Assembly (NCBI GenBank): GCA_002269645.1
Contig: NIVC01000237.1
Span: 62,001 to 126,000, forward strand
DNA from: Macrostomum lignano
Taxonomy: Eukaryota
Length of the DNA stretch: 64,000 nucleotides
Reading direction: 5' to 3'
In this document: in pieces, positions 1 to 56,288 of the stretch
Position numbering within the stretch: position 1 is the first letter of the stretch
Layout: each line of letters begins with the position of its first letter
The notes under the pieces: generated by a model
The model's input: only the letters and a program-made list of their open reading frames with translations
The model's database searches: none
What the model was told of the DNA's origin: nothing
Position numbers and translations under genes: made by a program

Positions 1-632
1 GATGATTGTTAGGATTTACTATAAACATAGGTAAACAATCATAGCCTATAATGGGAACTATTAATTCAAAAGGACTTATGATCTAACTTGATAATTAAGA
101 GATATAAACTATACAATGGTTAATAAAGTTGAGTTACTTATACCTTATATATGCGCAATCTGAAATTATACCAGCTATATAATTTAGTTTTGACTTGAAA
201 AAATTCCACTTAGTTTAAAGACCAAGTAAGACCTCAAACAAAATAAAGTTTCAATTTATAGTAGCTTTTTTGTCAAAAAGGCAAAAAATCTTAAATAGCA
301 GTTGCTTAATATGTATTATAATATAATAGGAAATACTATCTCCTAGAAGACTTTAGTTAATTAACTAAGAGAAGAAATTACAAAGAAAACTATGCAGGTT
401 TTAAAGGCCTAATATATCTGTACTATAGTCTAGATAATTATAGGCGTAGACAAATATAAAAAATTCTAGTTTTTTATTCTACTTGAAAATAATTACACTG
501 AAAACAAGGTTGCTTATATGCCAACTTAAATAATACATAGATTATTGCATCCTTTGATTTTGGACAAACATTGCCATCTACTAGCAAGCTATAATGCCTT
601 TTATATCATATATATTTTAAAAAGCAAATAAA

Positions 633-6267: not shown

Positions 6268-6730
6268 TCAATTCGCGCTGATTGCAGCGGCAGGACTGGA
6301 GCCGGCCTCCGCTGGCAGCACCATGTCGGCCACCGTGTCGCCAACAGCGCCGCCTAAGAACTTTGCGATCGGTTCAACAGCGCTTCTTCCCGGGCCGCTG
6401 CCGACTGCCAGGTGAAGCATCGTCGAGGTGGCCAGCACGACAGCTTGACGAATCAGGGCGCGCCAGAGTCGGCGGCTGAACACCAGCGCGCTGATTCGCC
6501 GATCAATCAGGTCGGCGAGGCTCTGGCGCAGCTTCAGCACGGCGGTCAGCGAGTCGGCAGCGGCCAATTTGACGAATGTGTCAGTCGCGGCTGCGGCTTT
6601 GGTGCGCAGAGCCAGCAGGTGCTGGCCGAGTCTGTAGCACAGCTGGCGGATCTGCTCTACCTGTGGGGGGTCGTTGGAATGGTATGATGTTTCAAAAGCG
6701 GCGCTAATACTACTACTGGTTACACTACAG

Positions 6731-6777
<47 letters not shown>

Positions 6778-6792
6778 GGTTACTACTACTAG

Positions 6793-6823
<31 letters not shown>

Positions 6824-9185
6824 GGTTACTACTACTAGTACTACTAATACTACTACTACTACTACTGCTACTACTACTACAAAACACAGTATGAATTCGC
6901 ACACCTGCAGACTCCGAGCCTCTCCCGACTTGGACCAAACTGCCAGGTGTTCGCAGTTCTCGCCAATCAGATGATAATTGGCTTGCTTTGCCTGTGACCT
7001 GGCGCGCCAGACTACTTGCTCTGGAGAAAAGCAGTCCAGGCTGTGGTAGACCAGGCGGTGGGTCTCGGGCTCCTTAGCCAGGTCCATCCGGTCCTCCCGC
7101 ACAACGCCTTTGCTGCGGCCAATTCGGAGCCACTGCAGCCAAGACTGCCAGGTGTCGCTGCGGGCCTCTGTGTAGTTCGAATAATGCAACACCTGATAGG
7201 ACTTGCCCTCTAGGTCAACCGAGGTCACAATTCCATGGTGCCAATAGACGCCACCCTGTCTCGGATAGCACACGTGATCGCCTGGCGACAGCTGGTCGAC
7301 GCTGGTTATTCGCTGGCGCTCGTGCGGCAGGCCGGCTTCGCCTGTGGAGTAGCGAGGTGCAACGACACGGCGCAGCTCCGCCAGGGTGGCCGGGCCCCGC
7401 GCCTGGCTGCTGACGTAGAGCGGAATGGCCAACTGGCAGCTGGTGGGGTGGAGCGGAGGGGTGGGAGCATACATGCGCAACAGTCGGCCGAGTCGGCCGA
7501 TCCGGCCGACCGATTTGGCGGCCAACCAAGGAAGTCGCAAAAATGCCGACCCGAAAAAAACCTAGTAGTACTAAGTAGCTGACGAGGCATTTTGGCTTTA
7601 TAAGACAGTCATAGTTACTTCTGCCGTTTACCCAGAGTTGCGTTAATTTTGCTTTCGGGTTTTTTTACATGTAAGTCGCATTTTTGGCCAAAAACTACGT
7701 CGCATTTTTGTTAAAACTAAGTCGCACGGCCGACCAAAATTTGGAGGTTGCGCATGTGTGGGTGGGAGACTATTAAAGTAAATAATACATGATGTTGTGT
7801 AGCGATGCTGAGGATCTGGAAGGGTGGCGGCCCCAGCACAACTCTGGGGATCTGCAGTGAGGGTGGCGGCCCCAGCACAACTCTGGGGATCTGCAGTGAG
7901 GGTGGCGGCCCCAGCACAACTCTGGGGATCTGCAGTGAGGGTGGCGGCCCCAGCACAACTCTGGGGATCTGCAGTGAGGGTGGCGGCCCCAGCACAACTC
8001 TGGGGATCTGCAGTGAGGGTGGCGGCCCCAGCACAACTCTGGGGATCTGCAGTGAGGGTGGCGGCCCCAGCACAACTCTGGGGATCTGCAGTGAGGGTGG
8101 CGGCCCCAGCACAACTCTGGGGATCTGCAGTGAGGGTGGCGGCCCCAGCACAACTCTGGGGATCTGCAGTGAGGGTGGCGGCCCCAGCACAACTCTGGGG
8201 ATCTGCAGTGAGGGTGGCGGCCCCAGCACAACTCTGGGGATCTGCGTCGCGCGCGGCCCAGTGGCAAGATACGAAAAGGTGGCAACCCAATCCGTGCCAG
8301 CGGGGAAACAGAGAACAAAACAGCTGATTAAAGTTTAAGAAATTGAGCCGTCAATATCACAAAAATGAAGCCTTACCCAGTACAGAACAGCGATTCATAA
8401 TGACTGTCAGCTTCAGCTGCAGCCAGCGCCGGTGATGCTTTAGCAGCTGACACCGAGTTGCCGCCTCGCCGATGATCAACAGGATGCAGCCGGTCGAAGC
8501 TGGCGCCTGGGCAGCGATCGCACAGATAGGGCGCCACAATGCTGTCCAGGCTGGTGTCTATGGCCTCGGCGTCGCCTTGACAACCATTTTGAGCAGCCCC
8601 GGTCGCCGCTGGCGATGAAGTCTCGTCAAGGAGAGCAAAGACGGCTTCACAAGCTGAGCAGGCGGCCATCAGCTTCAGGGCAGACGCGGAGGCTTCAACT
8701 AACGGCTGCTGGGGGCCGGCCAGTTCTAGCGAGAATTTCAGCCTGCCAGTGCAGCACTGGGGACACTGGAAATCAGCAGCGGGGCTGGCGTCCGCCACGG
8801 ATTCTAACTGGGCCATCTGGTGATCCAGCAGATTAAAGAAATTCTCAATTCGATCTGTGGGTACGGCCGAATCGCAGAGCAAGCAGAGAGTTAATCTGTT
8901 CCCAGGCTGCAAATTTAAGCGCCTGAAAGAGCCCGGCAACTCGTGGTTGCACATGGGACAGTAGGCGTAGCCCTCCCTCTCAGCCACTGGGAACTCGCAG
9001 CACTTGCACACTCGAACAAATGTATTAGCGATGGAGTCTCTAGCAGGGTTAAAGCGTTCGATTTTGACGAATTTTTCTGGATCCAGATTGCCGCACAGGC
9101 AGATGAAGTAGCGCTGAGATGCTGGCCTCAGGGACTGGTGAGGATGGGATAGCAATGTAGCCGAGTCGCTGACACTTCGATGCAT
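6268..9185 (-). CDS. Multi-zinc-ribbon plus LRAT (H-box/NC, permuted NlpC/P60) domain protein, 3 exons, 578 aa
   Basis: Exons 9185-8377, 7439-6905 and 6660-6268 (1737 nt) with phase-matched GT-AG introns (GG|GTAAGG...CCACCAG|C; CAG|GTGTGC...CCACAG|GTA). LRAT motifs PGDH..YWHHGI..VLHY..RARS..Y.L..ENCEH..G.ARSLQV are intact. Confidence 0.85.
6708..6882. repeat. (TAC)n microsatellite in intron 2 of the LRAT gene
   Basis: Read directly from the sequence. Confidence 0.95.
7472..7756. mobile_element. MITE with 10-bp TIR CATGCGCAAC, in intron 1 of the LRAT gene
   Basis: Perfect terminal inverted repeats with TA on the left and TG on the right; homologous in inverted orientation to 17880-18127. Confidence 0.8.
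7822..8246. repeat. 39-bp minisatellite, 11 near-identical copies
   Basis: Unit GGGTGGCGGCCCCAGCACAACTCTGGGGATCTGCAGTGA; it lies inside LRAT intron 1. Confidence 0.95.
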
Positions 9186-10139
9186 TGAGCTTAAACAGAA
9201 CTGGAGTGAAATTAGGATACAACTCTTTTATTCCTGTCTTCTTCTAACTTCTAATTTTGGCAGATTGAATCTGGACCCCAGATACCATATTCGAACCCTG
9301 TTTTCCTAGCTGGATGCAATAAGTGGCTACCCAATTAAAGTTACCCTTTTAAAGTTGTGAAAGTCAATATACCTTTAGCTAAGTGCTAACAGAAGGCTAT
9401 CTGGCTAGCTAAGTGTGTCCAACCCTAGCTAGACAGGCTAAAAGCAGTTGAGACACACTTGTATTGGTAGGCTACCACAATGGTAATCAAGACTGACTTT
9501 ATGAACATACTATCATACTGCCTACAATAATAAAATTACATGACATTGAGTATAACAATTGATGTAAATAACAATTCTATAACATTTAGTAATTGTAAAT
9601 GCTTATAATATTTAAAAGAACAACTTATATCACATATAAAACATTGTAATCTTACTTAATTTGTTCTTTTAGTATATAAATTCTTAAAAATTCATAACTT
9701 AGCATACTAGTATATATTACAAAATTAATTTTTGTTTTTGATATAATATAGCATTTTGCAAGCTAAAAGACTATAAGCAAGCAATTTAATCCAAGATAGC
9801 AAAAACACATGTATTTTGAGCCTCACTGCCAGTTGTCTATGGTAAAACGTGTGTCAAACTGGCAGGCAATTTAATCCTTGGAGCACTTATTTAAGCACTA
9901 TCTTACTTGGCATTTTTATATATTTCATACATGCCTCCAACCAAACCAACCAGGAAGCTTAGTATGAAAAAGTTAGGATGTAGAACAAGGTTTAGCAAGA
10001 AAAAGTTCACTTAATGAAACCTGCATATAAAGAAACACATGATAGAAAGTTTTGAATGTATATTTAGACTTCAGTAAGTTATATAATCACTTCCCCAGCA
10101 ATACAGCCTGTGTGAATTCTTGCCTACATGCTAAATTGA

Positions 10140-10731
10140 CCCTATAGAAAAAAGTTGTGAAACTGCGGACGGTGTCCGGCGCACTTTTGAAATTTTTCTA
10201 AAGCGCAGCGTGCGCACAGGCGCAGCGCCTGCGCGCGCTACCCTTTCTTACTGGCTGCTGCTCTAGCAAATACATATACATGGAAATGGGTATAATACCT
10301 CTGTTGAAGGGGCTTATACACTCGTAATTTATTAAGCTTAGAGATGTTCCAAAAATTCAATTTCAATTTTCCAAAATTTGAAATTTTTTAGAGCGAATTT
10401 CAATTTCGAAATAAAATTTAGAAGTGAAAATTTTGGTAGTGTCTAAAAAGTCGCTAAAAATAAACTACTTTCTACTACATATACATGTATTACTTTTTGC
10501 TTAAGCAGTAAATTGAAAGTAAAAAAGTGAGTGTTGATCATACTAAACTTTGTTTTTCTGAATTATGATTTCGGGAAATTTCAATTTTGATTTTGGAAAG
10601 TTAGCGAATTTTGATTTCGACGAAACTGCAGATCTTTTGGAACATCTCTAATAATCCTAAAGCGCGGTAAAATAGTTTGACTCTTTTCTAAAGCACGCGT
10701 CCGCGGGTTTTTAACATTTATTCCAATAGGG
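10140..10731. mobile_element. Non-autonomous DNA element nested in the MULE
   Basis: Imperfect about 32-bp TIRs (CCCTAT...GCGGACG) and an exact 8-bp TSD TAAATTGA at 10132-10139 and 10732-10739. Confidence 0.7.
10339..10650. mobile_element. Innermost MITE with 16-bp TIR TAGAGATGTTCCAAAA
   Basis: Perfect inverted repeats at 10339-10354 and 10635-10650. The TSD is either TA or a degenerate 8-mer. Confidence 0.7.
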
Positions 10732-12428
10732 TAAATTGACAATGCTTATATTGTTATCACCTCTGTTGATAGCATTGATTATCAATCTACACTTTTCATT
10801 GCTAATCTTAACATATTGCACAGGTGGCACTCTCTGGCAGTGATTCTGTTAATGTCTTCAGAAATAGTGCTAGCTTAGTCATTTTTGTCTAACATGTTGA
10901 AAAAACTGAGATTGGAATCGCATAGACAGCGCTGTTTATGGATTTCAGTGCTTAAATGAGTGCACCAAGGATTAAATTGCCTGCCAGTTTGACACACTTT
11001 TTTACCATAGACAACTAGCAATGAGGCTCAAAATGCATGTGTTTTTGCTATCTTGGATTAAATTGCTTGCTTATAGTCTTTACTAGCTTGCAAAATGCTA
11101 TAATATAGCATGATTGGCAATCACTATATGGTAAGCATATTGTTTAAACATATTTATAGTTGCTATTTTAAACATTTATCACAAAATTTTAATATAAATA
11201 AGCCTTCATCTTATCTCTGCATATGCCTTAACTTTCATGCTTTTGAATGGTATTCCAATAGGACTATAAAATAGATCATGGCAAATTTATACCAAAATAA
11301 AATTAGTTTTTTTTTATTTATGCCAATATAATTTAGGTTATACCAAAATATATTAGTTTGTATTTCTTTCAGAAACAAAAGTTTTACTGAATTATAAAGC
11401 ATTAATTTTACCATAAATTTTTATTAGACCTATTTCTTTTACTTTTATTTTTTCTATAAGTTACACTATATTTTTTATACAATATTCTTCTAGTCTTTAT
11501 CAAGTTTATGTAAAATAATTTTATAAAAGCTTTTTTAACAAAATTTAGTTATACCAAATATGTTAAACCTAAAATTTTATATGCCATGCATACTCCAAGC
11601 TCCAACCAAGATTTGTAGTAAAAGGCAAAAGTATACCAGAGTTGTTTAAATTAAAAAAGAAATAAAACATTACTTAAAAAATTATTTATATTCTAAAATG
11701 TAGTATAGAAACTAGCTTATTAGATGTTAATTTTTATTTAATTTTATAGTTTTTTTATTTGCATTTGCAATAGTTTAATTTTGAACACAATTTAACTATC
11801 AGGCCTAAAGCTAATATAATAGACTAAAGTCAAGATATAAAAATTATTAAAATATATACTGCCAATCAAAATAATCAATGAGTTGATCTACCCTATTGGA
11901 CTATTCTAAAACATGTTTAGGTGCCCTCGTACGCAAGCAAGTGCACAGACAAATATTGATCTCAAGCCCATAGCAGCACAGAATCACAAGAAACACAATT
12001 TCAAAACTAAGCCACCTAAATATTTTCAGTTTTTTATTGCTTTATTAAATGGTAGAAACAGAAAAAAATCACAGTAAAAAACACCCGCCATGCCTAAAAA
12101 TGCTATCTTAAAGTAAATTTGCCTCTGGCAAAGTGACAAAATCGCCAAGTCAGTACTACGCTATCTGTCCGCTATCCAACTTCAATAGAGACGCTCTCGA
12201 GGCTCAGCTGGCACGGGAATTTAAAAAGAGCAATTTTCGGTTTCGAGGACATTAGCAAAAACAAATGTACACTTATAAAGTCAGCTGAATAAAAAGAGGT
12301 CATTTATTTTATATTTATTGTAAAAATCTTATTTATTTTTACACAAAATGTTTATAATTTCCCAATATGGTAAGATTCGCGCTATGTACAAATGTACAAT
12401 GTGACAAAATCCGATACTTAATATCAAA

Positions 12429-12480
12429 TCCTATATACTAAAAATGAAAATCTTGCTTGCTTGCTTGTCCTATCCACTAA
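12429..12480 (+). mobile_element. Possible Helitron-like 5' end
   Basis: A|TCCTATATACTAAAA followed by (GCTT)n resembles non-autonomous Helitron starts. No 3' hairpin or CTRR end was located. Confidence 0.3.
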
Positions 12481-14900
12481 AAACCCATATAATATTGACT
12501 TTCAAACCCTAAACTAAAATAGTTTTTGAAAGAACCACTGCATCTACATGAATTTTTATCTGAGTTTTTAAAAAACCTCTATGCCGGACGGAATTTTCCG
12601 GATAACAAATAATGAAAAATGCTCACGAAAGGCACATGTAATATAAATCCACATTTTGGGTCCACTATAAACTTTTGGTGTGCTTGGTGTGCTTGGGGTC
12701 CTAGCATCTGGGTTAAAAAGCAGCGTAATCATTTCAATCAATTTTTAACATCGAGACTATTTTTTAGCGAAAAATGAATTTAGGTTTTATATTTTTTATA
12801 TTCGAGTGTGCTTCAATTTAATTAAAGCGGGTACTTTCAGTGTTTTAAAGACTGTATCAAGGACTATTTAACGACGGAAGTACTTAAGTTGCATTATAAT
12901 TGCTGGACAAAATTTTGCAACAACTTTTTTCGGGTTTAGTTTTGACGTTTTAACAGCTATAACAAATCTTGTCTTAGAAAGCTTAGGGCTACTTTAAAAT
13001 AAAAGCTTTATTATAATTAAAAAGCGGAAAAACAGTAAAAGCTGTTTTTACCAAACGTAAAGAAAATCTAGCCAACTACACTATTTTGATCAAAACATAA
13101 AATGAATTTTGGGATTACTTACGAAATCGACGGTTTCTTTATTTTTTTATCAATGAGTAAATATATACTGTGGAGTCTATTAAATTCTCTCAACTTCCGA
13201 AGTATTCTTTATGCTCTAATTAATGCAATCATTAAAAAATAAAAGTTCTGAATTATGAACTTTAAAACTTTTTTTCGGTGGGCCCTAATTTACGTTTTAA
13301 TTCCTTTGTTAGGCACTTCAGTGAGAAAATTAAATTTCAGAAATTGTTATAGGCTGCTATTTCACTAGATAGATCTTACTTTCCCATTTCCAAAATGGCC
13401 AAACTTTAGTGATTTGGTTGAGTAATAAGGAAACTACAGCTATTTTAGTAACCCCGATTTGTGCCTTTAGCCAATGGAATTTTTACATTACGGTTTGTGA
13501 TCATTTTTGGCCAAAAAGTTGGCTTTTTGTCTTTGAACACTTGTAATTAATTTTCTAGCCAACCAAAATGACTGTGCTTGGTGTCATTTTGTTCAGTTTT
13601 TTAGTGTTAATTGTATGAATTATATATTTTAATATTATTTTATATGCCCAAGTTGCTAAGCTAATTGAAACAGGATGGGTATATGAAATTTTGACTATTT
13701 TAACCAGATACGCAATGATTGCAATTTTAAAAATACAATAGCATCTGTTCTGCTTGCTTAATTTATACAAGGCTAGTGTCATTTTGTTCAGGTTTTTACC
13801 TACTATAATACTATTCTACTTCTTGCCCTAAATTTTTAATGCATGACAGACACCCCAACTGCAATGTAATGTGCTGTACAGGCTTTGCGCATGGGTTTAT
13901 TAAAAAACGGTTTTGCCTATCGTGTTCAGCATAGCAGAATTAGTTAAATGACACAGAGAACTAGTTTGCCGGAAGGCAGAGTCTCACAAAAAACACAAAA
14001 TACACGTTTCAATGGGTATTTTACATGTAAACGTATCAAAAAAAGAAACCTCCACAAAATTTTTGCGCCTATAGCTATTGGCAAGCGGTTTTTTTACTGT
14101 GCTTGTATTGTCAATAGGTAATGAAAAATATAAAGAGAAACAATGCAGGAAAAGGATTTCTTGGAAAATTTTGGATTTGAAATTTTGCATAGAGCCATAT
14201 GGGCAAAAAAAAAAAAAAAAAATTTTTTTTAACACCAGAAAAATGTTTCTAAATTATCCCTTTACACTATAAAACCTTTGTTTCCATTATAAGAAACACA
14301 TTGCAGCTAAGAAAAAGCATTTTCTGAACCACTGTTTTTTTATTCATTTTGGCTTCAATTTTATATTCCTCCTAAAAAATGGTCAACTTTAAAAATAGAC
14401 AGTGCAAAAAGTATAACAAAGCTAGACTTGCAGTTGGTGTCATTTGAAAGAGCTCCTTTTTACCTTTTAAATGCATATTTTACTTTCATCCTGGCTTCTA
14501 TAGTTTCTTTAAAATCGCCCTTGAAAAATTGGACTTTTTTCTTACTTTTTTGCCATTGGCACGCACTTCTTATAACTCACTGAAGTCCCTACCTTTGTCA
14601 GATTTTTTATAATTAAGTGTTTTTTATGTGATTTGATGCCGTGCTTAAAGCAAAGTAAACGTTTTTAACTGAAGCTAGAGGAATTTATCTACTGCCATGT
14701 AGGTCATGTCATGGTTAATCTAGTTAAATCACTGTTGAGGTCTCACTCAAGATTGAGAGACATTTGAGTCATTTGACTAGATGCATTTAGTGATTTGTGT
14801 TGTGTACTAGCTAGAGGCTGGTAATACTCATCATTACTCGAATCATCAGTTTTAAGTAAAGTAACTCAGTCAATCAAAATTCAACTAACTATAATTGAAT

Positions 14901-15351
14901 GGCAATCCTACAGTTTTCCGCTTTTAATTATTTTTCAAAAAATTACGGCAGGCACAGCAGGAATAAGAAATGACAATAAACTGACAACAATAGTCACTCA
15001 TGATAGTCACAACAGTTAATATGGATAAAAATGGCATAGGCCTATCCAATACAACATATTCCTGAATTGACGCTCTTGAAACAGCCAGCGCCATAAAAAC
15101 TCTTGGAGGTACATCTTGAACAGGCCATCTGCAGTACCATGCATCACCCAGTACTTGGCCTTGCAGTTGGTCCATGCACCCTCAATGGTGTTTGTATGGA
15201 TGGTAGGATCATTGGGGTCGACAAACTGGATAGAGTAATTAATGGTCACATGATTGGCCAGTTGATTATAGGCGGCCAGTGATCACTTGTGAGTCAGTGA
15301 TCACTTGGAAAAGCCAAAAAATATTTAAAAGCGGAAAACTGTAGGATTGCC
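14901..15351 (-). mobile_element. Internally deleted Merlin (IS1016/IS1595-like) DNA transposon
   Basis: Perfect 27-bp TIR GGCAATCCTACAGTTTTCCGCTTTTAA and 8-bp TSD AATTGAAT/AATTGAAC. The minus strand encodes W.AY..L....TINYS..FVDP...IHTNTIEGAW...K...L..YLQEFLWR, the Merlin transposase C-terminus. Confidence 0.88.
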
Positions 15352-17412
15352 AATTGAACTAGAATTGTCAAGTCAAGCTTTACTTTTTAATGCAGTAGGC
15401 TTGTGATTATGAAATAAGGGCACTCAATAAAATGCAGAATTTGCAGCATGTCACCGAATCAAAATGGAATAATACAGTAAAATGCAGATTGTTAAATTGC
15501 TAAATGAACTGAGGATTCCACTAACTACAAGTAAAATGTAAATGCAGGGTAGCCAAAGTATAATCTATATAATACTATATAGTACTATATAATCATATTT
15601 TTTATAACAATAAAACCTTTAAAAAATTGATTGAACTGCTAAAAAGAAAATTATATTTTAAATCCCTATCAAGCATTAGCCATATATTATGGCAGTATTC
15701 ACAAGGTAACCTATATTTATAATTATTACTTTGAGTAGGCCTAATAGATGGCAGATGCTGCTATTATACAGAATCATACTATATTTTTAACTATGTTTTC
15801 AATATGGTTAGGCCTATATTGCTAGGCCTATTGTTATATGTTTCTAAAGAATTTTTAAAAAGTGATATACTAGGTTGCAGATTGTGTAATACTGTATGTC
15901 AAAACAAAATTCTAGCTTATCTAAATATATGCCAGTGTATGCCAAAAACAAAAAATTCCCTAAAATGTATACCAAAAATTCCTCCTAAAGTCATTTATTT
16001 TTCATGAGTTTTCTAAGAAAGGCATTCATATAAAAAGTCTAAAATTGTAATATTTTCATTTTAAACAAACTTAAATTATACTTAAAGAAATAATGATACA
16101 AAATTGATGCTCTTAGCAATAATTTATACTTATTTTATTTGTTGTTAATTTTAAAGAAGCAAAAAGTTTATCACTTGCTCTCTAGACTATATAAATTTTC
16201 TTTTACTTTACATAAAAACATTAATTTATTGAGTTGGAGGCAGAGAAAGAAAACTGAATGAACCGAGGCCTTGAATGTGGGTTTTCAAAAAAAACCCATC
16301 GGCATTGTGTTTGCACAAATATAGTTGATAATCGCGCAGAAGAATCACAACAAAATTTTTCTCTTGTTTTATTCCAACAGCTGGGTCCTCAAGTCTAGGG
16401 GAGGGTAATTGTAAACGTAGCAGAGTGGTCTTGTAGCAGCACGGCCATTCAATTGATGAAACATTGGAGATTCTAACACTATAACTTAATGTGCAGATTT
16501 GCTGAGCTGGTTACTTTCAGTAAAGTAGTTGCTGCCACCACCGTAATTTATATATTATGGAACAATTCAGTCTTGGAGCTTTTTTAAGCTGAGAACTTTG
16601 GTTATTTTATACCCCACTGGCAAATGACTTTAAATATACTAAATCTCTAATATTTGTATGTCCGCAACGCTCTAATAAGAAATACTATGGCTTTGGTTCA
16701 ACGGATAAATATTAGGAGGAAGTTCAAGTTTATTGACTTGTCATTGACTTGACACTATGGGAATGAGATGGGGAGAGGAAGGTTAAGCCAGTGGTAGTAG
16801 AAAATCATGTTGCATTGCGTTTAAATATACAAAAGGAATAATGGTTCACAAATTGAAGCATTGGCTGGACATAAACATGGAAGCAAATTCACACAAAGGG
16901 GCATATCGCGAGGCGGCATTAAACACAGAAAAAAACAAAAACTACAGTTCTCGTCTAGCATTGCGTAAGCAAATGCATAATGAGAGAAACGTGCCAATTC
17001 AACTTCAGGAATGACATCATTTTAAGTAACAGAAAAATGCAAAATTTCAACCCCAAATTGAAAAATTCGCAAATTAATTATTTCGTGGCAACTTGACTAC
17101 CACATTATATTAAAATTTTCATGCAAGGCATAAATTTATTCACCAAAATATATACACTAAAATGTATGCGTAGTTGTATTACTTGTGTATGCCAACAAAG
17201 TGCACCAGGGGTTGTGTATATCAATTGTGTATGCCAAGGACTTAGGGTTGCCATTTTATACTTCAGAAAGTTCCAGCATACATACATACCATCCGCAACA
17301 TGGGTGATATATAGTAGGCCTATCAATTTAAAATATATATTTTTGATTATTATATTTATATTTTATTTTAAGTATATAGAATCTATAGTTTATTCTATAA
17401 TTTATCATTTTG

Positions 17413-17559
17413 CTATAGATTCTACATTTTGGCATGTTATTCTATTTTAATTCTACTATAGATTCCATATTTTGGCATGTTATTCTATTCCAATTCAGCT
17501 ATGGATTCTACATTTTGGCATGTTATTCTATTCTAATTCTGCTATGTATTCCACATTTT
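17413..17559. repeat. About 43-bp tandem repeat, about 3.5 copies
   Basis: Unit core ATTCTACATTTTGGCATGTTATTCTATT. Confidence 0.85.
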
Positions 17560-17879
17560 AGTAGGTAGCTTAAATTTATGCAAGGAATAGTTAATAATAT
17601 TAGATAACAATTTTTTTAATCTTGGGTTTTTAGCTGATTTAGACTAATTTTGATGCTGAGTCCAAAAGTAAATTCAATCAAGTCTAGTTTTTTAGTATGC
17701 AAAGTTTTAAATATTTGATTTGGTTATATAAAAAGAAACAAGAAATAATTTCTTCTTTTTGTAGATGGTAACAAGTAAATTTTCTAGAAGTTGATTTGCC
17801 AAAAGTAGGCTATTTTGCTAAAAGTTTTATTATATGATTCTATTGCAAAACAAACAAATAAACAATTAAACAAATCATA

Positions 17880-18127
17880 CATGTGCAACTTCCAAATTTC
17901 GGTTGGCTGTGCAACTTAGTTTTAACAAAAATGCGACTTACATGTATAAAAAACCCAAATTAACACAACTTTGGGTAAACAGCAGGAGTAACTATAAAGC
18001 CAAAATGCTTCGTCATCTACTTAGTACTACTACCCGGTGTTTTTTCGCGTTGGCATTTTTGCGACTTCCTTGGTTGGCTGCCAAATCGGTCGGCTGGATC
18101 GGCCAACTCAGCTGACTGTTGCGCATG
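17880..18127. mobile_element. MITE of the same family as 7472-7756, with TA target duplication
   Basis: TA|CATGTGCAAC...GTTGCGCATG|TA; colinear with the reverse complement of 7472-7756. Confidence 0.8.
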
Positions 18128-25889: not shown

Positions 25890-28800
25890 ATGTCGACCTC
25901 GGCTGATACAGAGGAAAAGCTTACTAAACATTTGGTTTTGATTGAGATCTCTGATTCTGTTGGTGTTAACCACGAGAACAGTGTTGACGAAGAGAGCAAC
26001 GAAGCTGCAGTTCGAGCAGTTGTCGAACAGGTCTGTCAGAAGGTGTGCGATGTCTGCTGCACTGTCGGCCCCAATAGCATCAGTGATCGCATCCAAGCTG
26101 TACAGCTTGAAGCCACAGCCTCAGCGCAGTCTGACAGTATTGCTGCTATTCAGCATGACTCCGTAAAAGCAATTGACGAGTCGGCATCAAGTCAGCATTC
26201 TTGCGAATCAATACCGTCTCCAGTTGCTCAGAGCACGTCTCAGGAGCGGTTCTCGCCTGGTGCCAATGAAGAAAAAACTTCTCCACCTGTAACTAATGCA
26301 GAATCTGACTTAGATGCGGATACAAAAGCTGATGTAGAGGAGAACCTGGTGCAGCAAAAACAATCTTCTACTGAAGTAGCTTTGAGTACCAACGCTGAGC
26401 AATTGTCTCCTGTTAAAATGAAAGAAGAATCTAGAGAGTCTCTCAATAGTAGAGAAGAAGAAGAAGCGGGCAAGCAAACGCCTCTACAGGTCGTTGAAGC
26501 AGCAGACGAAGTGCTGCATCAATCTGAGCTAGACAATCAGAGTGCAGCGCAGCAATGCGCCACATCAGCAGAGAACTTGCAGCCAATTGATCGATCGTCA
26601 AGATTAATCAATGATGAATTAGAACCAGTGAAAGAAACAATCGACAGGAGCATGGATCAAGACTCGAGACCGATCTGTTCGCCCGACGATGCTTGTAAAG
26701 AATCTTTAGAAGCCGAAAAGCCGCTTGAGGACCAACATATTTATCAGTCATCTGATAAGACGCTCTCCGAAAACTCTAGTCAGACAGTTGCAAATCAGTC
26801 AATACAAGACGCGAATGCGTCTAGTTGTTCAAATTCTGCTAACAGTGAGCAAATTGAAGTTACAGAACAGCAAGCATTACAGACAGAGGCCCTCATTGAA
26901 GAAACCAACTCACAAGTATTGGAAGCGTCGCCACCAGAAGATCAAGGCTTAGAAGTCGCTGCTGCAACTTCACATCAACACAATGAGCAGGAACAAGAGG
27001 GGAAGTTGTCGTCTCAGAATATCCCTTTTGCAGAATTACTTCGAGAACAATATCAATCTTCGGGTAGTAACTCGCCAACTGTTGAACTTCAACATGCTGA
27101 TGTAGCACAAGTGGACGATGCATCGCAAAATCAACAGCAGTCTGATCTAGCAGAGCCCAGTGCTGAGCTTGCAGATCATTCTGAGATGGCGCTCGATTCA
27201 AATCAAGGTTCAGTTTCGTCGGAAAGTGAAGCAGAATCTCAGAAAGCAGTGCTGACTGTAGATAATTCCTCAGCAGACGAACCAGAACTAATACCATCTG
27301 AAGCTGCAGTGGTGAATGTTTCATCGCTAGATCATTCTGCAGACAATAGCGACATCGGAGCCGCATGTGGTGCGGAAGTGGAAGCAACGACTGCTTCTGA
27401 AAGCGATCCCAGCAACACATTAAGATCTGATGTTGAATACATGGAGCCAGAGACAGTTTCGTATGATGCCCTGCACATTGAATCTGATGGCATACTAAAT
27501 GAGGTTTCCCAGTTGCTGTCGGATATGTGCTCCAAAGTATCATCACTGCAGCAGGGGTCGAAGGAAACTGCAAGCGATAGTGAAGATGATGACGATCTTA
27601 TGTCAGAGTTGCACGGCGGTAGAAAGTCTGGTGGCGGTACTTGCGCTGAAGGTGAAGTTGACGACTACATGTCGGAATTGTGCGGTGACGGTCCATTGAC
27701 TAAAGTTGCAGCAGCAGCCGCTGATGATGCAGAAGCTGACCTAATGACTGAGCTGTCGGGCAGCGGAGCTCAATTGTCAGCCGTTGTTGCAATGGGCGAT
27801 GAGAGCGGCGACGAGGCTGACACAGACTCTAAACTAATTCTGTGTACTGCTACAACCGCCGCGGGTGCTGTCGGATCCAGTGATGTTGAAGTGACGGCTG
27901 AGTCTAGTGCCGAACCTATTGCCACCGCTTCGGTCATAGTTGATTTGCCATCGACCTCAACATCAGCTATTGCACAAACAGAGTCAGTTGCTTCCGCCAC
28001 AGCCGATGCATTGGCTAGCATAAAAGCAATGGCAGTGATGGCTTCAGCTGGTTCAGGATCTTCCGCGGACGAATTGGCCGCTCTTAAGCGACGCCTTGAA
28101 CAATTGGAAGCTGAAAACAGGATGCTGAAAGAGAGCATACAGCCGGCAACAGCTGAACCAGCTCAGGCTGTTGTTGCTACTGTTGTCACCTCAACTGCCA
28201 GTGCTGTAGTGAGTGGCACGGCTGCCAGCGGAAGCTCCGGCACGCAGCAGCATCAACAGGCTGATTCTAGCGGCAGTCCGCAGAGTTTCTCTTCGTACGA
28301 TTCAAGCTCACAGAATTATATTCCTGCCGGCGGCTTTCTTAAGAGTCTTAGTGAGATTGAGGAGTCTGGCGGCGCCGTCAGTGGTGGATGCACCGAGACA
28401 CCGTCGACTTCCGCCTCGTCTGCGTCTCAGCAACAGCAGGCGGCGCCGCAGTCTCTTGAAAGCGGCATGGCAACAATCGTTACAGCAGCCGCTTCTGTGC
28501 CGGCTTCCACCGTGGCTACTGCTGCCATTCAGGCGCCCGTTTGCTCGCTAAATACAGGCGTCTCCGCTGCGGCCGGTCACATTCCAGCTACTATCACGCC
28601 AAGCGGTCAGATACAGTTTTTACTGCCGCCCGGCGTGTTGCCCTCCAATTTCGCCGGTCTGGCAGCTGTTCCTCAGTCTGCGTCGTCGGTAGAGCCTGCG
28701 TCAGTGACCGCCGCGTCTACCAGGGCAACAACCACAACTACATCGTCCGCTGCCAGGCCGACACCCGTTAAGCCTGCCGCACCGGCGCCTTCCAAATCGG

Positions 28801-31800
28801 TGCAGTCGACTTCAGCCGCCGGAGCGTCGTCGACTTCGACTCCCGCTAACAGGCGCGTGCGCACGATCGCTCCGAAGCCTATCGCTATGCGCCCCATCTT
28901 GCCGTCGCCCAGGACCGACATGAGTGCCAAGCTGCAGCCGATACAGCTGCCCGGCAGCAAAATCGCTTCATCATCTGCGGTATCCGCCACCGCCACTTTG
29001 TCTGGCGCATCAAAGAAGTCCAAAGTGTCCACGTCGGGCAAGAAGCCTATGCAGACAGTGCCGGCCTCTTCAACAGTGCCAACGTCGGCGTTGCACGGGT
29101 CAGTTTCGACTCCGATGCCCGTGGCAATGCAGCTGCCATCTGGCGCCATCGCCGCTGTGAGCCAGTCCAAGTCGTTGCCGCTAGTTGTTGGCGCTCCAAT
29201 TGGCGTTTGCGGCTCGATGGCGCCGCTTCTAGCCGGGACCGGCATCCCCATGCCTGTCAATCATTCGTCCGCCGCGGCGGTGTGGGCTGCTGCCCCGCCT
29301 GGCGCCACATTTGCCACTACCTGGGCTCCGACAGCGCCTACAGCCGTAGTGTTCTCGTCTGGCCATCCGCTTAGCGCTGGCAGTTTAGAAGGCACCGCCC
29401 TACCGAGCCACGACTTGCTAGCCATCGCTTGCCAGGAGGCCGGCCTGTCGCTCGATTTGGACCTGGGCAGTACAGTGATGATCTCTACTAGCCAGGACTC
29501 GGCCACGTCCTCGGCGCCAATCATTGAAGGCGTCGGCTGCGACCAACAGTCGGAAGCGGTGGCCGATCTTAGCGGCCTGGTTGTTGATTCGCAGAACGAG
29601 TCATCTTTCCTGCACGAGCTTGGTCTTATACAGCCGCCGTCGCAGGATGAGGGTACTGCTCAACAAAATACCGATGCCGCTGTGCCGCTCTCTTCCGAGT
29701 CAATTGTTCAGTGCCCTCCTCAGCAAGAGCAGAAACAAGAGCAAGCCCAAAATCAGACTGTGCAACAGCAGCAGCAGCAGGAGTGCTGGAATACAACAAC
29801 ATTCGATGAGTTTAACGCTGCCCTGAATGATTTCAACAGCGACTCGGTCACGGCTTCGTCGGATCCGCCTTCGAGTTCGAAATCGTTGAATTCAAATCGG
29901 GCTAGTGCACCGACCGCAGCAACGAAGCCTACTGAAACCGTTGTTACCAATAGTAGTGGGAGAGAATCTTCCAAATCTGCTCCGTTGTCTGTTTCCACTG
30001 AATCTGTTACGCAATTAGCCTCCAGTTTGACTAACAAAAAGTCGCACGCCAAGTCAAAGGTGACTTCGCCGTTGCCAGCTCCAGCCCCGGCTTTGTCCAG
30101 TACTTCCAAAGCTACTGAATCCGCGCCGGCCAACTCGCAGGCTGGCAAGCAGCCGGCGGCTCAATCGACAAAAAATACGCCAAAGAAGAAGGCGCCGCCT
30201 GCGTCAACAACGGCAAATAAAAGATCAACCCCAAACAAAGAGCGAGAAGCGAAATCTGGCGCTCGAAAGCTGCAGGCAGATCCCAGCGGCGACGATTTAG
30301 AGCTGTTTAAAGAGATCATCCCGCCGAAGAAGGTGATCCACAGCCTGTCGGAGAATGACGAAATCGAGGAAGCCGTCAAAGGCATTGTTGGCCCTTCTAG
30401 CTTAGAGGACACGATAACGGGTGTGCTGAAAGCTGGCGATGCCTCCAACCAGGAGCGGGCGGTGGTTAAAGATTCTGGCGCCAAGACCTCTGCTACTGGA
30501 CCAACTTCTCCCCAGCAGCCAGCTTCTGCCTTGCCGCCTTCATCTTCATCGAATGCGCAGTGCCAGCTGGCTGACTTGTCGGCAGTTGGGGACTCCTGTC
30601 CGGTGGTGAGTATTCCAGAGAGCGCAGCTGTGCCGTTCGGTGATCCGGTTTGCCTGGCCACAGCAGAGCGGCCCGCTGCAAGCCAGGAGCAAACCGAGCG
30701 ATCCGGCAGCGCTAAGAAAAAGCATCATCAGGACAGCAGCAGTAAGAAGCCGCCATCGGTAACTGATCAGAAGTCTTCTCAAGCGGCTTCGAGTTCGAAT
30801 AAGCGAAAATCTGTCGAATCTTCGTCGGGCTCTACGAAGTCAAACAAGTTGGCGCCGGAGGAAAAGTCGCCGCAGCGCAAGGCTTCGTCAGCGGCCGCCT
30901 CTTCGCCAACAAAAGAAGATTCCAAAGGCAAAGCGGCGTTGAATGAAGGTTCCAAGGCGTCAAAGGCGTTAACTAGCCCTAAAAATACTGTAAAGGACAC
31001 GAAATCGAAAGAGAGTCAGAGCCCAAGCAGATTTGAGCAGCAGCAGCAGCAGCAACAGAAGTCTTCAAGTCGCAGCGCCATTCATCGTCACAAACAGCTG
31101 GCCGAAGAAAAGACTGAAGCGCCTGCTTCTTCTTCTTCAAGTCGAAGGGATTCTAGCGAACGGAAGCAGCAGAAACACTCGAAAGATGTTAGGAAGAGTT
31201 CCGAACAGACACACGAGAAGCTGCCGAAAGCTTCAAGTAAAAGCGAAGCGACTGTAGAAGAATCCTCAGAGATCACGGCTTCTTCCTCCAAGTCCAAATC
31301 TTTGACGAATTCTTCTTTGTCAAAGAAACGCGAGGACAAGAAATCAAAATCGAATGCCAGCAGCGGCAGCAGCAGCAAGCAAGCCGCCCCGGCCAAGCCT
31401 GCCAAATCTGTTCCGCCGAGCAGCGAGCCAGTCAGGCGCAGTGAAAGATCTCGATCGACTAGCAAACTTAAATGTGACGACTCCAAGGAGACTCTCGCTA
31501 CTGAGTCTCGTCGGACTCTGTCCGTTTCTACGTCCGAGTCGGCCTCAGTTGTCGGGCACAGCAGCAGTTGCAGCAGCAAAGCTGTCCGGGCGTCGCGCCG
31601 AATCGCCGCCAAGAACGTCAAGCGCCAGTCGTCGCGCTCAGCGGCCGACTCGGGCAGGCTGTCCGATGTTGAAAGCTTTAGCTCCTCCTCTTCATCTTCC
31701 GACTCTGACACTGAGGAAATCGACAAGCCGGCGGGCAAGTCAAAAACAATCGCTAAAAAATCATCGGAACCAGCCGCAGCGTCGCCGGCCGTGTCGCCGA

Positions 31801-33271
31801 CAAAAACAGCGGCGGGTGGCAGCAGCAGCAGCAGGCTGTCCCGGCAGGATAGTGACCAGCTGCTCTATGAGCACCACCCGATGCACGGCGAACCGGTCAC
31901 CAGCCGCGAGAAGCGACTGTCGGCTAGGCGCGCCCGTCAGTCCGAGCTCGAACTGCACGAAGCTGTTGAGGCGTCTAAAGTCACTGCCGGCTTTGCGTCT
32001 GCTTCTTCTAGTAGCAAGAGCAAGACAGCTGGTAGCAAGGCGGCAAATTCATCGGAAGCGGATAAGCCCGATAGTAAAAGCGACAGTAAAGATAGTGAAG
32101 TTAAAGAGCCGAGCGAGGCCGCCCCATCTCGCAGTCAGGAGCCGGCGCCGCTGCCAGAGCTGAAACCCGGAGAGGAAATCGCTGCGGCGCTTGAAGACGA
32201 CAGCAGCGTAGCCGAAGGCTTCGGCCTGTTGGAAGCTTCCGGCAGCGGCCTGCGCGGAATCGGTGACGCGGCGCATTTCCTATGGAACCGGGCCGTCCTG
32301 GGCGGCACCGGCGGCGTCAGCGGTAGCGGCGACGATCCTCTCGCGTCGAATTCGCAGCATCGCCGACAGAGGCCGTTGATCGAAGAGCGCAGCCCCAGTC
32401 CGCCCCCGCAGCCGTCGCTGGCGCTGGAGATCATCGCACGCGGCGGCATTGTTAGGCCGAAACCGGCCGCACAGTCGCAGCAGGAGCCGCAGCTGCCGTC
32501 GCCGCTGCTGCTGTCCTCGCCACTGTCCACTCGAGCTCAGCAGGCTCCGCCGCCGGAGCCGACACCGCCGCAGCCGCCGCCACCGCCTCCGGCCCCGCCG
32601 AAGCCGGCGTTCGTCCCGATGAACCTGTCCAAGCTAGAAAAGCGAGATGCTGGACGGTCGAAGGATTCGACGCCGGCCAATGCCGGGTCGACAACACCGA
32701 GCTCGTTGTCGGGGGGTTCAGCCGGGCCGGCCAGCAGCGGCGGCAGTCCAATCAAGCGGAAATTTTTCTCCTCCGACCGCGAAGATCGCCGTAGGTTTCT
32801 ATTCAAACAAAATTTCGGCAGCGTCGGCGCCAAAACCAGCAGCGGAGCTGGCGGCGGCGGCAGCAGCGCCGGCGGCTCCGGGTCGGGCGGCGGCAACAGC
32901 CGGGGCCAGTTCGACTTCGAGCCGGACGCTGGCGGCAAGCGGGCCAGGCGGAATCAGTCGGAGGCGGCAGCCACAGCGGCGGCAGCGGCGGCCCTGCTGG
33001 ATCTGTCGGCGCAGAAGTTTGTCCCGCCACTGTCGGTGTCGGTCGCCTCCGCTTCTCAAGCGCTGTCGGACGCGCCGCCAACAGCAGACGACGCCGCGGC
33101 CGCCAAAGTGCCGAAAGTTCCAAAGATATCGATTAAACCGGTGAAGCCTGATGCCGTGCCGGCTGCTGAACTGCGCCAGCCACAAGAGGCTGTCCGAGCT
33201 GCTTCATCTGATCCACAGATTCCCATCAAGCTCAAACTCAAGCTTAGTAATCAGTTGCAGCAGCAGCAGCT

Positions 33272-33306
<35 letters not shown>

Positions 33307-40622: not shown

Positions 40623-49069
<8,447 letters not shown>

Positions 49070-50949: not shown

Positions 50950-56288
<5,339 letters not shown>

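What the first reader, a model, noticed from the sequence alone, without database searches (positions are those of the whole stretch)
6268..9185. Tandem zinc-ribbon array fused to a catalytically intact LRAT/H-NC enzyme
Seen: three ORFs that look unrelated in the track splice into one 578-aa protein. Exon 1 has a GTAAGG donor at its in-frame stop, and the join completes a CxxC motif (LFCTG|CQLAI). The N-terminal half has eight Cys knuckles (CLC, CKCC, CPMC, CLLC, CPQC, CSAC, CDRC, CTGC), enough for about four zinc ribbons. Next come the LRAT triad (YWHHG, VLHY, NCEH) and a helical tail ending in a small-residue GGAVG motif. Known: LRAT/PLAAT H-NC domains are phospholipases or acyltransferases, are usually small single-domain proteins, and also occur as picornaviral 2A proteins. 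Inference: I do not recognise this architecture. It could be a ligand-, nucleic-acid- or metal-gated lipid-remodelling effector, possibly in immunity or organelle destruction.
Basis: partly seen in the sequence, partly recalled or inferred. Interest (0 to 1): 0.8.

Follow-up and report, generated by a model that had tools for sequence, protein, structure and literature searches.

The report
Zinc-ribbon array fused to LRAT enzyme
A real three-exon flatworm (Macrostomum lignano) gene encodes four zinc ribbons, an intact PLAAT/LRAT-type lipid enzyme domain and a basic helical tail; the protein is already in UniProt, and it belongs to an unstudied family found in flatworms, annelids and relatives, so it is moderately rather than highly novel.

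Summary
Three minus-strand ORFs join through two GT-AG introns (9185-8377 | 7439-6905 | 6660-6268) into a 578-aa protein. That protein is 100% identical over its full length to UniRef A0A1I8GNP3, 'LRAT domain-containing protein', Macrostomum lignano.

Eight Cys knuckles form four Cys4 zinc ribbons. This many knuckles arose in 1 of 100,000 shuffles, most of the knuckle Cys are invariant in relatives, and AlphaFold gives each unit a knuckle-β-β-knuckle-β topology. An LRAT domain follows (Pfam E 1e-10) with the His337/His355/Cys432 triad, then four amphipathic helices.

The fusion is not a gene-model artefact. An M. lignano paralog encodes ribbons, LRAT and tail in one uninterrupted exon, and another relative does so in a single ORF.

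The architecture is not unique. At least about 20 clusters (50% identity) carry 4 or more knuckles upstream of LRAT, including two M. lignano paralog groups and the annelid Ridgeia. All are unnamed beyond 'LRAT domain', no Pfam model reached E ≤ 1 on this protein's ribbons, and I found no literature.

The ribbon region is always acidic and the tail always basic. This argues against nucleic-acid binding and suggests membrane binding, perhaps with autoinhibition.

Most likely function: an interface phospholipase A/acyltransferase with a regulatory or targeting zinc-ribbon module. An immune or organelle-destroying role is untested.

The parts
8377..9185 (-). Exon 1: codons 1-269 plus 2 nt of codon 270. 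It encodes zinc ribbons 1-3 and the first half of ribbon 4. The ATG is at 9185-9183.
   Evidence: ORF 8373..9185; splice reconstruction; tblastn of the 578-aa protein gives 100% identity for residues 1-270
8997..9101 (-). Zinc ribbon 1 (aa 29-63: C29xC31 ... C60xC62C63). It carries the family signature CxCGNxDxxxF.
   Evidence: C29, C31, C60 and C63 are invariant in A4 and A6; strands 39-44, 55-60 and 66-68 in the AF2 model; the signature recurs across the family
8874..8960 (-). Zinc ribbon 2 (aa 76-104: C76xxC79 ... C101xxC104)
   Evidence: Cys invariant in A2 and A4; strands 87-93, 96-101 and 107-109, with pLDDT 74-80 in the N-terminal model
8649..8765 (-). Zinc ribbon 3 (aa 141-179: C141xxC144C145 ... 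C176xxC179)
   Evidence: C144, C176 and C179 invariant in A2; strands 149-155, 170-176 and 182-184
7436..8522 (-). Zinc ribbon 4 (aa 222-271: C222xxC225 ... C268xxC271). It is split by intron 1 inside its second knuckle, and it has a lineage-specific Ala/Ser-rich insertion.
   Evidence: C225, C268 and C271 invariant in the 9-sequence alignment A2; the junction restores CxxC; strands 265-268 and 274-276
7440..8376 (-). Intron 1 (937 nt, GTAAGG...CCAG). It contains a perfect 39-bp x 10.9 minisatellite at 7821-8245.
6905..7439 (-). Exon 2: end of ribbon 4, the conserved linker helix (aa 289-300, LRRxV...SxGxxGxP), and the LRAT domain
6905..7324 (-). LRAT / H-NC catalytic domain (aa 309-448). H337 is at 7240-7238, H355 at 7186-7184 and Cys432 of NCEH at 6955-6953.
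   Evidence: Pfam PF04970 E 1.1e-10; the family profile hits the PLAAT2/3/4 and LRAT-chimera structures at E 2e-9 to 1e-6, with H, H and NCEH aligned; pLDDT 89-98 over most of the domain; Foldseek hit to a giant-virus LRAT, E 2.7e-4
6661..6904 (-). Intron 2 (244 nt, GTGTGC...ACAG). It contains a (CTA/TAG)n microsatellite at 6704-6880.
6268..6660 (-). Exon 3: basic amphipathic four-helix tail (aa 449-578; helices 447-473, 475-500, 506-534, 540-562; GGAVG at 550-554) and the stop codon at 6270-6268
   Evidence: AF2 pLDDT about 80-88; tail pI 10.5; hydrophobic moment up to 0.54; Kyte-Doolittle peak 1.47 at residues 516-534

Best explanation
This is a genuine three-exon Macrostomum lignano gene. 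It belongs to a conserved but uncharacterised spiralian lineage of the LRAT/PLAAT (permuted NlpC/P60) family.

The protein has three modules:
1. An acidic N-terminal array of four Cys4 zinc ribbons.
2. A catalytically competent LRAT domain (His337, His355, Cys432).
3. A basic, amphipathic four-helix C-terminal tail. In many relatives this tail ends in glycine-zipper-like hydrophobic segments.

Proposed mechanism, inferred by homology to PLAAT/LRAT: the tail docks the enzyme on a membrane surface. Cys432 attacks an sn-1 or sn-2 ester of a glycerophospholipid and forms an acyl-thioester. The acyl group is then released (PLA1/2 activity) or transferred to an acceptor (acyltransferase activity).

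The zinc-ribbon array is most likely a protein-interaction or regulatory module, not a nucleic-acid binder. Its negative charge is consistently opposite to that of the tail. This suggests, as inference only, that it could mask the tail or the active site until a partner binds.

Shown here: the gene structure, the domain content, the conservation of the Cys ligands and the triad, and the existence of the family. Inferred: the lipid substrate, membrane binding, and the regulatory role of the ribbons.
For: Gene model:
- The splice reconstruction gives a 578-aa protein identical to UniRef A0A1I8GNP3.
- The exon 1/2 junction restores a CxxC that is invariant in 9 relatives.
- The exon 2/3 junction sequence RSLQ|VEQIRQLCY is contiguous in the closest relative's contig L001 (RSFQVENIRQLCY). 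L001 also has an intron-like ...ttccacag|CTGCAAG at the position of the window's intron-1 acceptor.

The fusion is real:
- M. lignano paralog P0005 encodes residues 93-620 (core ribbons, LRAT and tail) in one uninterrupted exon of L003.
- P0003 (735 aa) carries the whole architecture in one ORF.

Family:
- 762 phmmer hits at E <= 0.001. At least about 20 representative clusters have 4 or more knuckles upstream of LRAT.
- Named members come from M. lignano and Ridgeia piscesae.

Enzyme:
- Pfam LRAT E 1e-10.
- The family profile hits PLAAT2/3/4 structures at E about 2e-9, with the catalytic His, His and NCEH aligned.
- H337 and N431 are invariant and H338 and C432-E433-H434 nearly invariant in 73 sequences.
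- The CHH triad of LRAT is documented in PMC10318531. PLAAT3 C113 and its C-terminal TM segment are required for membrane damage (PMC9338259).

Ribbons:
- Shuffle test 1/100,000.
- β topology in two AF2 models.
- The best Foldseek matches are Rpb9 (tandem zinc ribbons), NrdR, TFIIS and Rpp21.

Charge dipole: the N-terminal region has pI 4.2-5.6 and the tail pI 8.7-11.1 in 19 of 19 members. The tail helices are amphipathic.
Against:
- There is no biochemical data for any member of this lineage.
- The tail of this particular protein is only weakly hydrophobic (Kyte-Doolittle maximum 1.47), and it has no Gly-zipper Pfam hit, unlike 10 of 73 relatives. Membrane anchoring is therefore less certain here than in PLAATs.
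- Foldseek support for the zinc-ribbon fold is not significant (best E 0.017), and ribbon pLDDT is only 50-87.
- Direct sequence similarity to PLAAT3 is short (19 of 54 identities).
- Some NlpC/P60 relatives are amidases or peptidases, so a lipid substrate is not proven.
- The autoinhibition idea rests on charge alone. No inter-domain confidence data were available.
Confidence: 0.55

Rival explanations
1. Innate-immune or cell-death executor (a sharpened form of the first reader's idea). The ribbon array senses a pathogen- or damage-derived ligand, relieves autoinhibition, and unleashes a membrane-destroying PLAAT-like lipase whose glycine-zipper or amphipathic tail inserts into membranes.
For: The family shows a variable ribbon number (1 to 6 or more) and lineage-specific paralog expansions: three groups in M. 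lignano and many LRAT paralogs in Mytilus. The ribbons (25-30% identity) and tail (14-20%) diverge faster than the LRAT core (34-43%). Glycine-zipper hits occur in 10 of 73 relatives. PLAAT3 can destroy organelle membranes (PMC9338259).
Against: There is no expression, induction or genetic evidence. I found no association with known immune domains (death, TIR, NACHT) in any member examined. Faster divergence of non-catalytic modules is common and not specific to conflict genes.
Confidence: 0.15
2. The catalytic domain acts on proteins rather than bulk lipids, for example as a thiol amidase, a deacylase, or a ubiquitin-like-modifier peptidase. The zinc ribbons would recruit the protein substrate.
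For: The LRAT family lies in the NlpC/P60 papain-like superfamily, which includes peptidases, lipid-amino-acid amidases and PPPDE deubiquitinases/desumoylases (PMC3142127, PMC10318531). There are weak Pfam hits to Peptidase_C97 in 11 of 73 members and to Amidase_6 in this protein (E 0.005, below the cut-off). The acidic ribbons are better suited to protein binding than to nucleic-acid binding.
Against: The only hits above threshold are to LRAT (73 of 73 members). All solved-structure hits are PLAAT or LRAT lipid enzymes. The NCEH motif and CHH triad are the LRAT type. The basic amphipathic tail points to membranes.
Confidence: 0.15
3. Gene-model artefact: exon 1 (the zinc-ribbon ORF) and exons 2-3 (LRAT plus tail) belong to separate transcripts. 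Alternatively, an LRAT-only isoform starts at the in-frame ATG just upstream of the exon 2 acceptor (MYAPTPPLHPTSCQLAI...).
For: No RNA reads were examined. An in-frame ATG exists in the 3' end of intron 1 (ORF 6773..7540). The gene caller also called the closest relative's contig as an LRAT-only ORF (P0002). The exact protein is not on record in the contig collection.
Against: The junction restores an invariant CxxC. Paralogs and orthologs encode ribbons plus LRAT in a single exon or ORF. The exon 1 ORF would otherwise end with half a ribbon. A previously deposited gene model gives the same 578-aa protein.
Confidence: 0.05

Closest known systems
PLAAT1-5 / HRASLS family (e.g. PLAAT3 = PLA2G16; PDB 4dot, 4dpz, 7zom)
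   Same: Both have a permuted NlpC/P60 LRAT domain with a His-His-Cys triad, an NCEH(F/L) motif and an S-x-Q-V motif that closes the domain. In both, a membrane-directed C-terminal extension follows. The family profile matches these structures at E about 2e-9.
   Different: PLAATs are about 160-aa proteins with a short Pro-rich N-terminus and a single C-terminal TM helix. This protein has a roughly 280-aa array of four zinc ribbons and a 130-aa basic four-helix tail. Pairwise similarity is limited to about 54 residues at 35% identity. It is not an ortholog.
LRAT (lecithin:retinol acyltransferase)
   Same: Same Pfam family (PF04970) and the same acyl-thioester chemistry expected from the conserved Cys and His residues.
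   Different: LRAT has N- and C-terminal membrane helices and no zinc ribbons. By my own knowledge it also has an LRAT-specific insertion. No retinoid link is implied here.
Uncharacterised spiralian 'LRAT domain-containing proteins' (M. lignano BOX15_Mlig027228 and Mlig018064; Ridgeia piscesae KAK2171280; unnamed ENA/Logan proteins P0003, P0004, P0007, P0057 and others)
   Same: Same architecture: tandem CxCGNxDxxxF...CxxC ribbons, then LRAT, then a basic helical or Gly-rich tail. The four ribbons align one-to-one with P0004, P0005 and P0006.
   Different: The number of ribbons and the linkers vary. P0005 and P0006 have Glu in place of the second His. Many relatives have clear glycine-zipper hydrophobic ends that this protein lacks. 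This gene is split by two introns where the paralog P0005 has one exon.
Rpb9 / TFIIS / TFIIB-type zinc ribbons
   Same: Cys4 coordination, two knuckles and a three-stranded β topology, arranged in tandem as in Rpb9. These are the best Foldseek matches of the N-terminal model. There are weak Pfam hits to Zn_Ribbon_TF, Zn_ribbon_IS1595 and Lar in relatives.
   Different: No significant sequence or structure score (E >= 0.017). The ribbons are acidic rather than basic, and there is no transcription-machinery context. The resemblance is at fold level only.
Viral LRAT/H-NC proteins (giant-virus LRATs; picornaviral 2A H-box/NC)
   Same: Same catalytic fold. Foldseek hits Catovirus and Pithovirus LRAT proteins at E 2.7e-4 and 1e-2.
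   Different: The viral proteins are single-domain and have no ribbon array or helical tail.

Membership tests
LRAT family (Pfam PF04970; permuted NlpC/P60) | Sequence match above the curated threshold | tested here: met
   42.2 bits against a cut-off of 24.3, E 1.1e-10, residues 319-444 covering profile positions 2-119 of 120
LRAT family (Pfam PF04970; permuted NlpC/P60) | Cys-His-His triad in permuted order (the two His residues N-terminal to the NCEH Cys) | tested here: met
   H337, H355 and C432 are present. H337 is invariant and C432-E433-H434 nearly invariant in 73 relatives. The family-profile alignment to PLAAT2/3 places the consensus His, His and NCEH on the PLAAT catalytic residues, and H337/H355/C432 of this protein occupy those consensus positions. 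The CHH triad of LRAT is per PMC10318531.
LRAT family (Pfam PF04970; permuted NlpC/P60) | LRAT/PLAAT-like three-dimensional fold | tested here: met
   AF2 pLDDT is 89-98 over most of the domain. Foldseek hit to Catovirus LRAT, E 2.7e-4, probability 1.00. The whole-model PDB search was uninformative because the model is multi-domain.
LRAT family (Pfam PF04970; permuted NlpC/P60) | Phospholipase A or acyltransferase activity through an acyl-Cys intermediate | not testable with these tools
   Requires an enzyme assay with wild type versus C432S
PLAAT/HRASLS subfamily | Small protein: a short Pro-rich N-terminus, the LRAT domain and a single C-terminal TM helix (PMC9338259) | tested here: not met
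   The N-terminus is a 280-aa zinc-ribbon array. The tail is four helices of 130 aa whose best hydrophobic window scores Kyte-Doolittle 1.47. It works like a PLAAT but is not a PLAAT ortholog.
Zinc-ribbon fold | Four Cys ligands supplied by two knuckles, conserved in relatives | tested here: met
   Eight knuckles; 1 of 100,000 shuffles reach this number. Most of the knuckle Cys are invariant across alignments A2, A4 and A6.
Zinc-ribbon fold | Knuckle, β-hairpin, knuckle, β-strand topology and structural similarity to known ribbons | tested here: inconclusive
   The topology appears for all four units in two AF2 models, but pLDDT is 50-87. The top Foldseek hits are Rpb9, NrdR, TFIIS and Rpp21, with E >= 0.017.
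Zinc-ribbon fold | Zinc binding (about 4 Zn per chain) | not testable with these tools
   Needs metal analysis of purified protein
Glycine-zipper membrane motif (PF13488) | Pfam match or a GxxxG-type repeat within a hydrophobic segment of the tail | tested here: not met
   No hit in this protein at E <= 1, only a single GGAVG. Ten of 73 relatives do match.
Spiralian ribbon-LRAT-tail lineage (unnamed) | CxCGNxDxxxF-type ribbons upstream of LRAT, a conserved LRRxV...SxGxxGxP linker, an acidic N-terminus and a basic tail | tested here: met
   Ribbon 1 carries CLCGNLDPEKF. Linker residues R284, L292, R293, S301, G306 and P308 are invariant in A1. The charge pattern is shared by 19 of 19 members.

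The most novel reading that the evidence does not exclude
The CxCGNxDxxxF zinc-ribbon array is a ligand-sensing, autoinhibitory module. It electrostatically masks the basic membrane-inserting tail of a PLAAT-like lipase. Binding of a pathogen- or damage-derived protein ligand, or oxidative zinc release, would free the tail and trigger membrane or organelle destruction. That would make this a previously unrecognised invertebrate cell-autonomous immune or cell-death effector family.
Probability: 0.12. Interest if true: 0.75.

Novelty: new variant of a known kind. Interest (0 to 1): 0.45.

Why it matters
PLAAT/LRAT enzymes are known as small, constitutively active membrane lipases. They act in organelle clearance, lipid signalling and, by my own knowledge, picornavirus entry, and how their destructive activity is restrained is poorly understood. 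This family carries a large conserved zinc-ribbon array and a long basic tail on an intact catalytic core, which offers a natural example of a regulated or targeted PLAAT-like enzyme. M. lignano is transgenic- and RNAi-tractable (own knowledge), so the question can be tested directly. The ribbon unit itself (CxCGNxDxxxF...CxxC) lacks a domain model and could be added to domain databases. If the gene turns out to be ordinary lipid metabolism, the finding is a useful annotation and nothing more.

Tried and rejected
- Exact-protein contig look-up for P0001 found nothing on record, so no transcript contig of this gene itself was available.
- A single-sequence PDB search found nothing meaningful. 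A family profile was needed.
- A word-indexed homolog search with the 9-sequence full-length alignment timed out.
- The same search with the ribbon-only alignment returned just 2 proteins. Whether the ribbon module occurs with other effector domains remains unanswered.
I redid it with exact substrings.
- The whole-model Foldseek search against PDB was uninformative for a multi-domain model.
- Literature searches for LRAT with zinc ribbon, glycine zipper, Macrostomum or flatworm found nothing relevant.
- Two of the three cluster look-ups returned almost no organism names, so the phyletic range rests on a few named members.
- I considered and rejected nucleic-acid binding by the ribbons (acidic in 19 of 19 members).
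- I rejected a RING or cross-brace reading: each pair of adjacent knuckles flanks its own β-hairpin in the models. The UniProt 'RING-type' label on a paralog fragment is probably a generic Cys-pattern hit.
- I rejected a paralogous copy elsewhere in the window, because tblastn finds none.
Full report
**Observation**

On the minus strand, ORF 8373..9185 ends with ...CTG TTC TGT ACT GG|GTAAGG, so the in-frame TAA lies inside a consensus donor. An acceptor ...CACCCCACCAG| at 7440 opens exon 2 (7439..6905). Exon 2 ends ...CTGCAG|GTGTGC, and a second acceptor CCCCCCACAG| opens exon 3 (6660..6268). Joining the three pieces gives a 1737-nt CDS and a 578-aa protein. tblastn of that protein back to the window finds only these three pieces and no second copy.

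The protein is 100% identical over 100% of its length to UniRef A0A1I8GNP3, 'LRAT domain-containing protein', Macrostomum lignano. The window is therefore flatworm genome, and this exact gene model is already in public databases.

**Are the junctions right?**

I could not examine RNA reads, and the exact protein is not on record in the contig collection. The comparative evidence is strong, however.

- The exon 1/2 join creates C268-T-G-C271. Both Cys are invariant in a nine-sequence alignment of full-architecture relatives.
- The exon 2/3 join gives RSLQ|VEQIRQLCY. The closest relative (P0002, 59-62% identical) has RSFQVENIRQLCY contiguous on its contig L001. That contig also shows an intron-like ...ttccacag|CTGCAAG exactly where the window's intron 1 ends.
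- The M. lignano paralog P0005 (PAA49922) encodes residues 93-620, meaning its four core ribbons, LRAT and tail, in one uninterrupted exon of L003.
- P0003 (735 aa) carries the whole architecture in a single ORF of L002.

The ribbon-LRAT fusion is therefore real and not a product of merging genes.

**The zinc ribbons**

Eighteen of the 19 Cys in residues 1-275 lie in eight C-x(1-2)-C knuckles. Only 1 of 100,000 shuffles reaches eight, against a mean of 2.06.

They pair into four units at residues 29-63, 76-104, 141-179 and 222-271. These align one-to-one with the four core units of P0004 and of the M. lignano paralogs P0005 and P0006, and most of the knuckle Cys are invariant there.

Two AlphaFold models give every unit the same knuckle, β, β, knuckle, β topology. 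pLDDT is 50-87, best for units 2 and 3.

Foldseek of the N-terminal model puts Rpb9 (two tandem zinc ribbons) at ranks 1-13, followed further down by NrdR, TFIIS and Rpp21. The best E-value is only 0.017. The fold assignment is therefore reasonable but not proven.

Pfam has no hit in this region of the protein. Across 25 family members I extracted 91 such units. They share the recurring signature C-x(1,2)-C-G-N-x-D/N-x-x-x-F ... C-x-x-C, often followed by G-[IV]-D-D. Ribbon 1 of this protein (CLCGNLDPEKF) carries it.

**The catalytic domain**

Pfam LRAT matches residues 319-444 (E 1.1e-10, 42.2 bits against a cut-off of 24.3). A profile of 73 relatives hits the PLAAT2, PLAAT3, PLAAT4 and PLAAT3/LRAT-chimera structures at E 2e-9 to 1e-6. 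In that alignment the consensus positions occupied here by H337, H355 and the NCEH Cys432 fall on the PLAAT catalytic residues. H337 and N431 are invariant in all 73 sequences, and H338 and C432-E433-H434 are nearly invariant.

The domain is modelled at pLDDT 89-98 over most of its length and matches giant-virus LRAT proteins in BFVD at E 2.7e-4. The CHH triad is the documented LRAT type (PMC10318531). Direct pairwise similarity to PLAAT3 is short, 19 of 54 identities around NCEH.

**The tail**

Residues 447-562 form four long helices with pLDDT about 80-88. They are amphipathic, with hydrophobic moment up to 0.54, and net basic. The most hydrophobic window (516-534) scores Kyte-Doolittle 1.47, which is borderline for a transmembrane helix.

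Relatives often end in clearly hydrophobic Gly-rich segments (Kyte-Doolittle 1.8-2.0). Ten of 73 match Pfam Gly-zipper_Omp. This protein does not.

**The family**

An exhaustive phmmer search finds 762 proteins at E <= 0.001, most matching through the LRAT domain only. Among the listed hits and cluster members, 28 sequences, representing at least about 20 clusters at 50% identity, have four or more knuckles upstream of LRAT. Typically there are eight, giving four ribbons.

Named members are two further M. lignano paralog groups (BOX15_Mlig027228, Mlig018064) and Ridgeia piscesae KAK2171280. A search from the Ridgeia protein adds many unnamed ENA, Logan and JGI proteins with four or five ribbons, plus bivalve (Mya, Mytilus) LRAT proteins with none or a single knuckle and a second LRAT-like domain. 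The unnamed ENA protein P0180, which closely resembles the Mya protein, has one CxCGN ribbon followed by two LRAT-like domains.

All are labelled only 'hypothetical' or 'LRAT domain-containing'. I found no paper on LRAT plus zinc ribbons, LRAT plus glycine zippers, or LRAT proteins in flatworms. The architecture is thus conserved and already in databases, but undescribed.

**A family-wide charge pattern**

In all 19 full-architecture members tested, the ribbon region is acidic (pI 4.2-5.6, net charge -8 to -57) and the tail basic (pI 8.7-11.1, net +2 to +16). This argues against nucleic-acid binding by the ribbons. It fits a tail that binds anionic membrane surfaces. It also permits, as inference only, an intramolecular acidic-basic interaction that could keep the enzyme off membranes until a partner engages the ribbons.

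Domain-wise identity to paralogs is highest in the LRAT core (34-43%), lower in the ribbons (25-30%), and lowest in the tail (14-20%).

**Mechanism**

The best-supported reading is an interface phospholipase A/acyltransferase of the PLAAT type. The tail binds the membrane, Cys432 forms an acyl-thioester from a glycerophospholipid, and the acyl chain is hydrolysed or transferred.

In PLAAT3 both the catalytic Cys and the C-terminal membrane segment are needed for membrane damage (PMC9338259). The ribbons most likely mediate protein interaction or regulation.

Rivals:
- an immune or death effector (a special case of the above, with no direct evidence);
- a protein-directed amidase or peptidase (weak sub-threshold PPPDE and amidase hits);
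- a gene-model artefact (unlikely, given).

**Comparison and novelty**

The protein is a member of the LRAT family, and all testable criteria are met. It is not a PLAAT-subfamily member, because the architecture criterion is not met. It belongs to an unnamed spiralian ribbon-LRAT-tail lineage.

I rate it a new variant of a known kind. The enzyme class is familiar and this protein is already predicted. The conserved zinc-ribbon array, the ribbon signature and the charge dipole have not been described. Interest is moderate at 0.45: worth a domain-database entry and a test in a tractable flatworm, but not the 0.8 first assigned.

Noticed in passing
window 7821-8245 (inside intron 1): A 39-bp unit repeated 10.9 times at 100% identity with no indels. 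It looks like a very young or homogenised minisatellite. It creates long spurious ORFs in several frames on both strands.
   Followed up: partly
window 6704-6880 (inside intron 2): A (CTA/TAG)n microsatellite of about 58 copies (79% matches, 4% indels). It extends the exon-2 ORF artificially into a poly-Val/Ser tail.
   Followed up: partly
window 25890-35114 (+): A single uninterrupted 3074-aa ORF starting with ATG. The first 700 aa are acidic, Ser/Glu/Ala-rich and look disordered. There is no Pfam hit at E <= 0.001. It may be a large single-exon gene of unknown function.
   Followed up: partly
window 44917-45480, 53298-54700, 57462-59985 and many others: The window is extremely repeat-rich, with 28 Tandem Repeats Finder rows above score 300 (some overlapping rows describe the same array). 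They include (GTCT)141, (TATC)351 and a 19-bp CT-rich unit repeated 135 times. These explain the extreme GC/AT skews at 18-20 kb and 58-60 kb and several long spurious ORFs.
   Followed up: no
window 10001-18000: An 8-kb AT-rich block (GC 0.30-0.32) lies immediately upstream of the gene, against 0.47-0.54 across the gene itself. Composition is very heterogeneous across the window, from 0.30 to 0.64.
   Followed up: no
L003 2001-4068 (M. lignano NIVC01003758.1, paralog P0005): The paralog keeps ribbons, LRAT and tail in one exon and has only small introns in its extra N-terminal ribbon region. The window gene is split at two different places. Introns have therefore been gained or lost between the paralogs.
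   Followed up: partly
P0005 and P0006 (M. lignano paralogs), alignment A1: The second triad His (H355 here, VLHY) is Glu in both paralogs (VIEY, LIEY), while the first His and NCEH are kept. This is a Cys-His-Glu variant of the triad within the same family.
   Followed up: no
P0180 and P0185 (the unnamed ENA protein P0180 and its Mya arenaria relative): In P0180, one CxCGN ribbon is followed by an LRAT domain with NCEG/NCES instead of NCEH, then a glycine-zipper-like segment, then a second LRAT-like domain with NCKD. P0185 has the same layout but no CxCGN ribbon. This tandem-LRAT architecture was not examined further.
   Followed up: no
window 42608-43591 (-): A 328-aa ORF with a sub-threshold Pfam hit to MRVI1 (21.4 bits against a cut-off of 27). 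It overlaps a 21-bp tandem repeat and is probably spurious.
   Followed up: no
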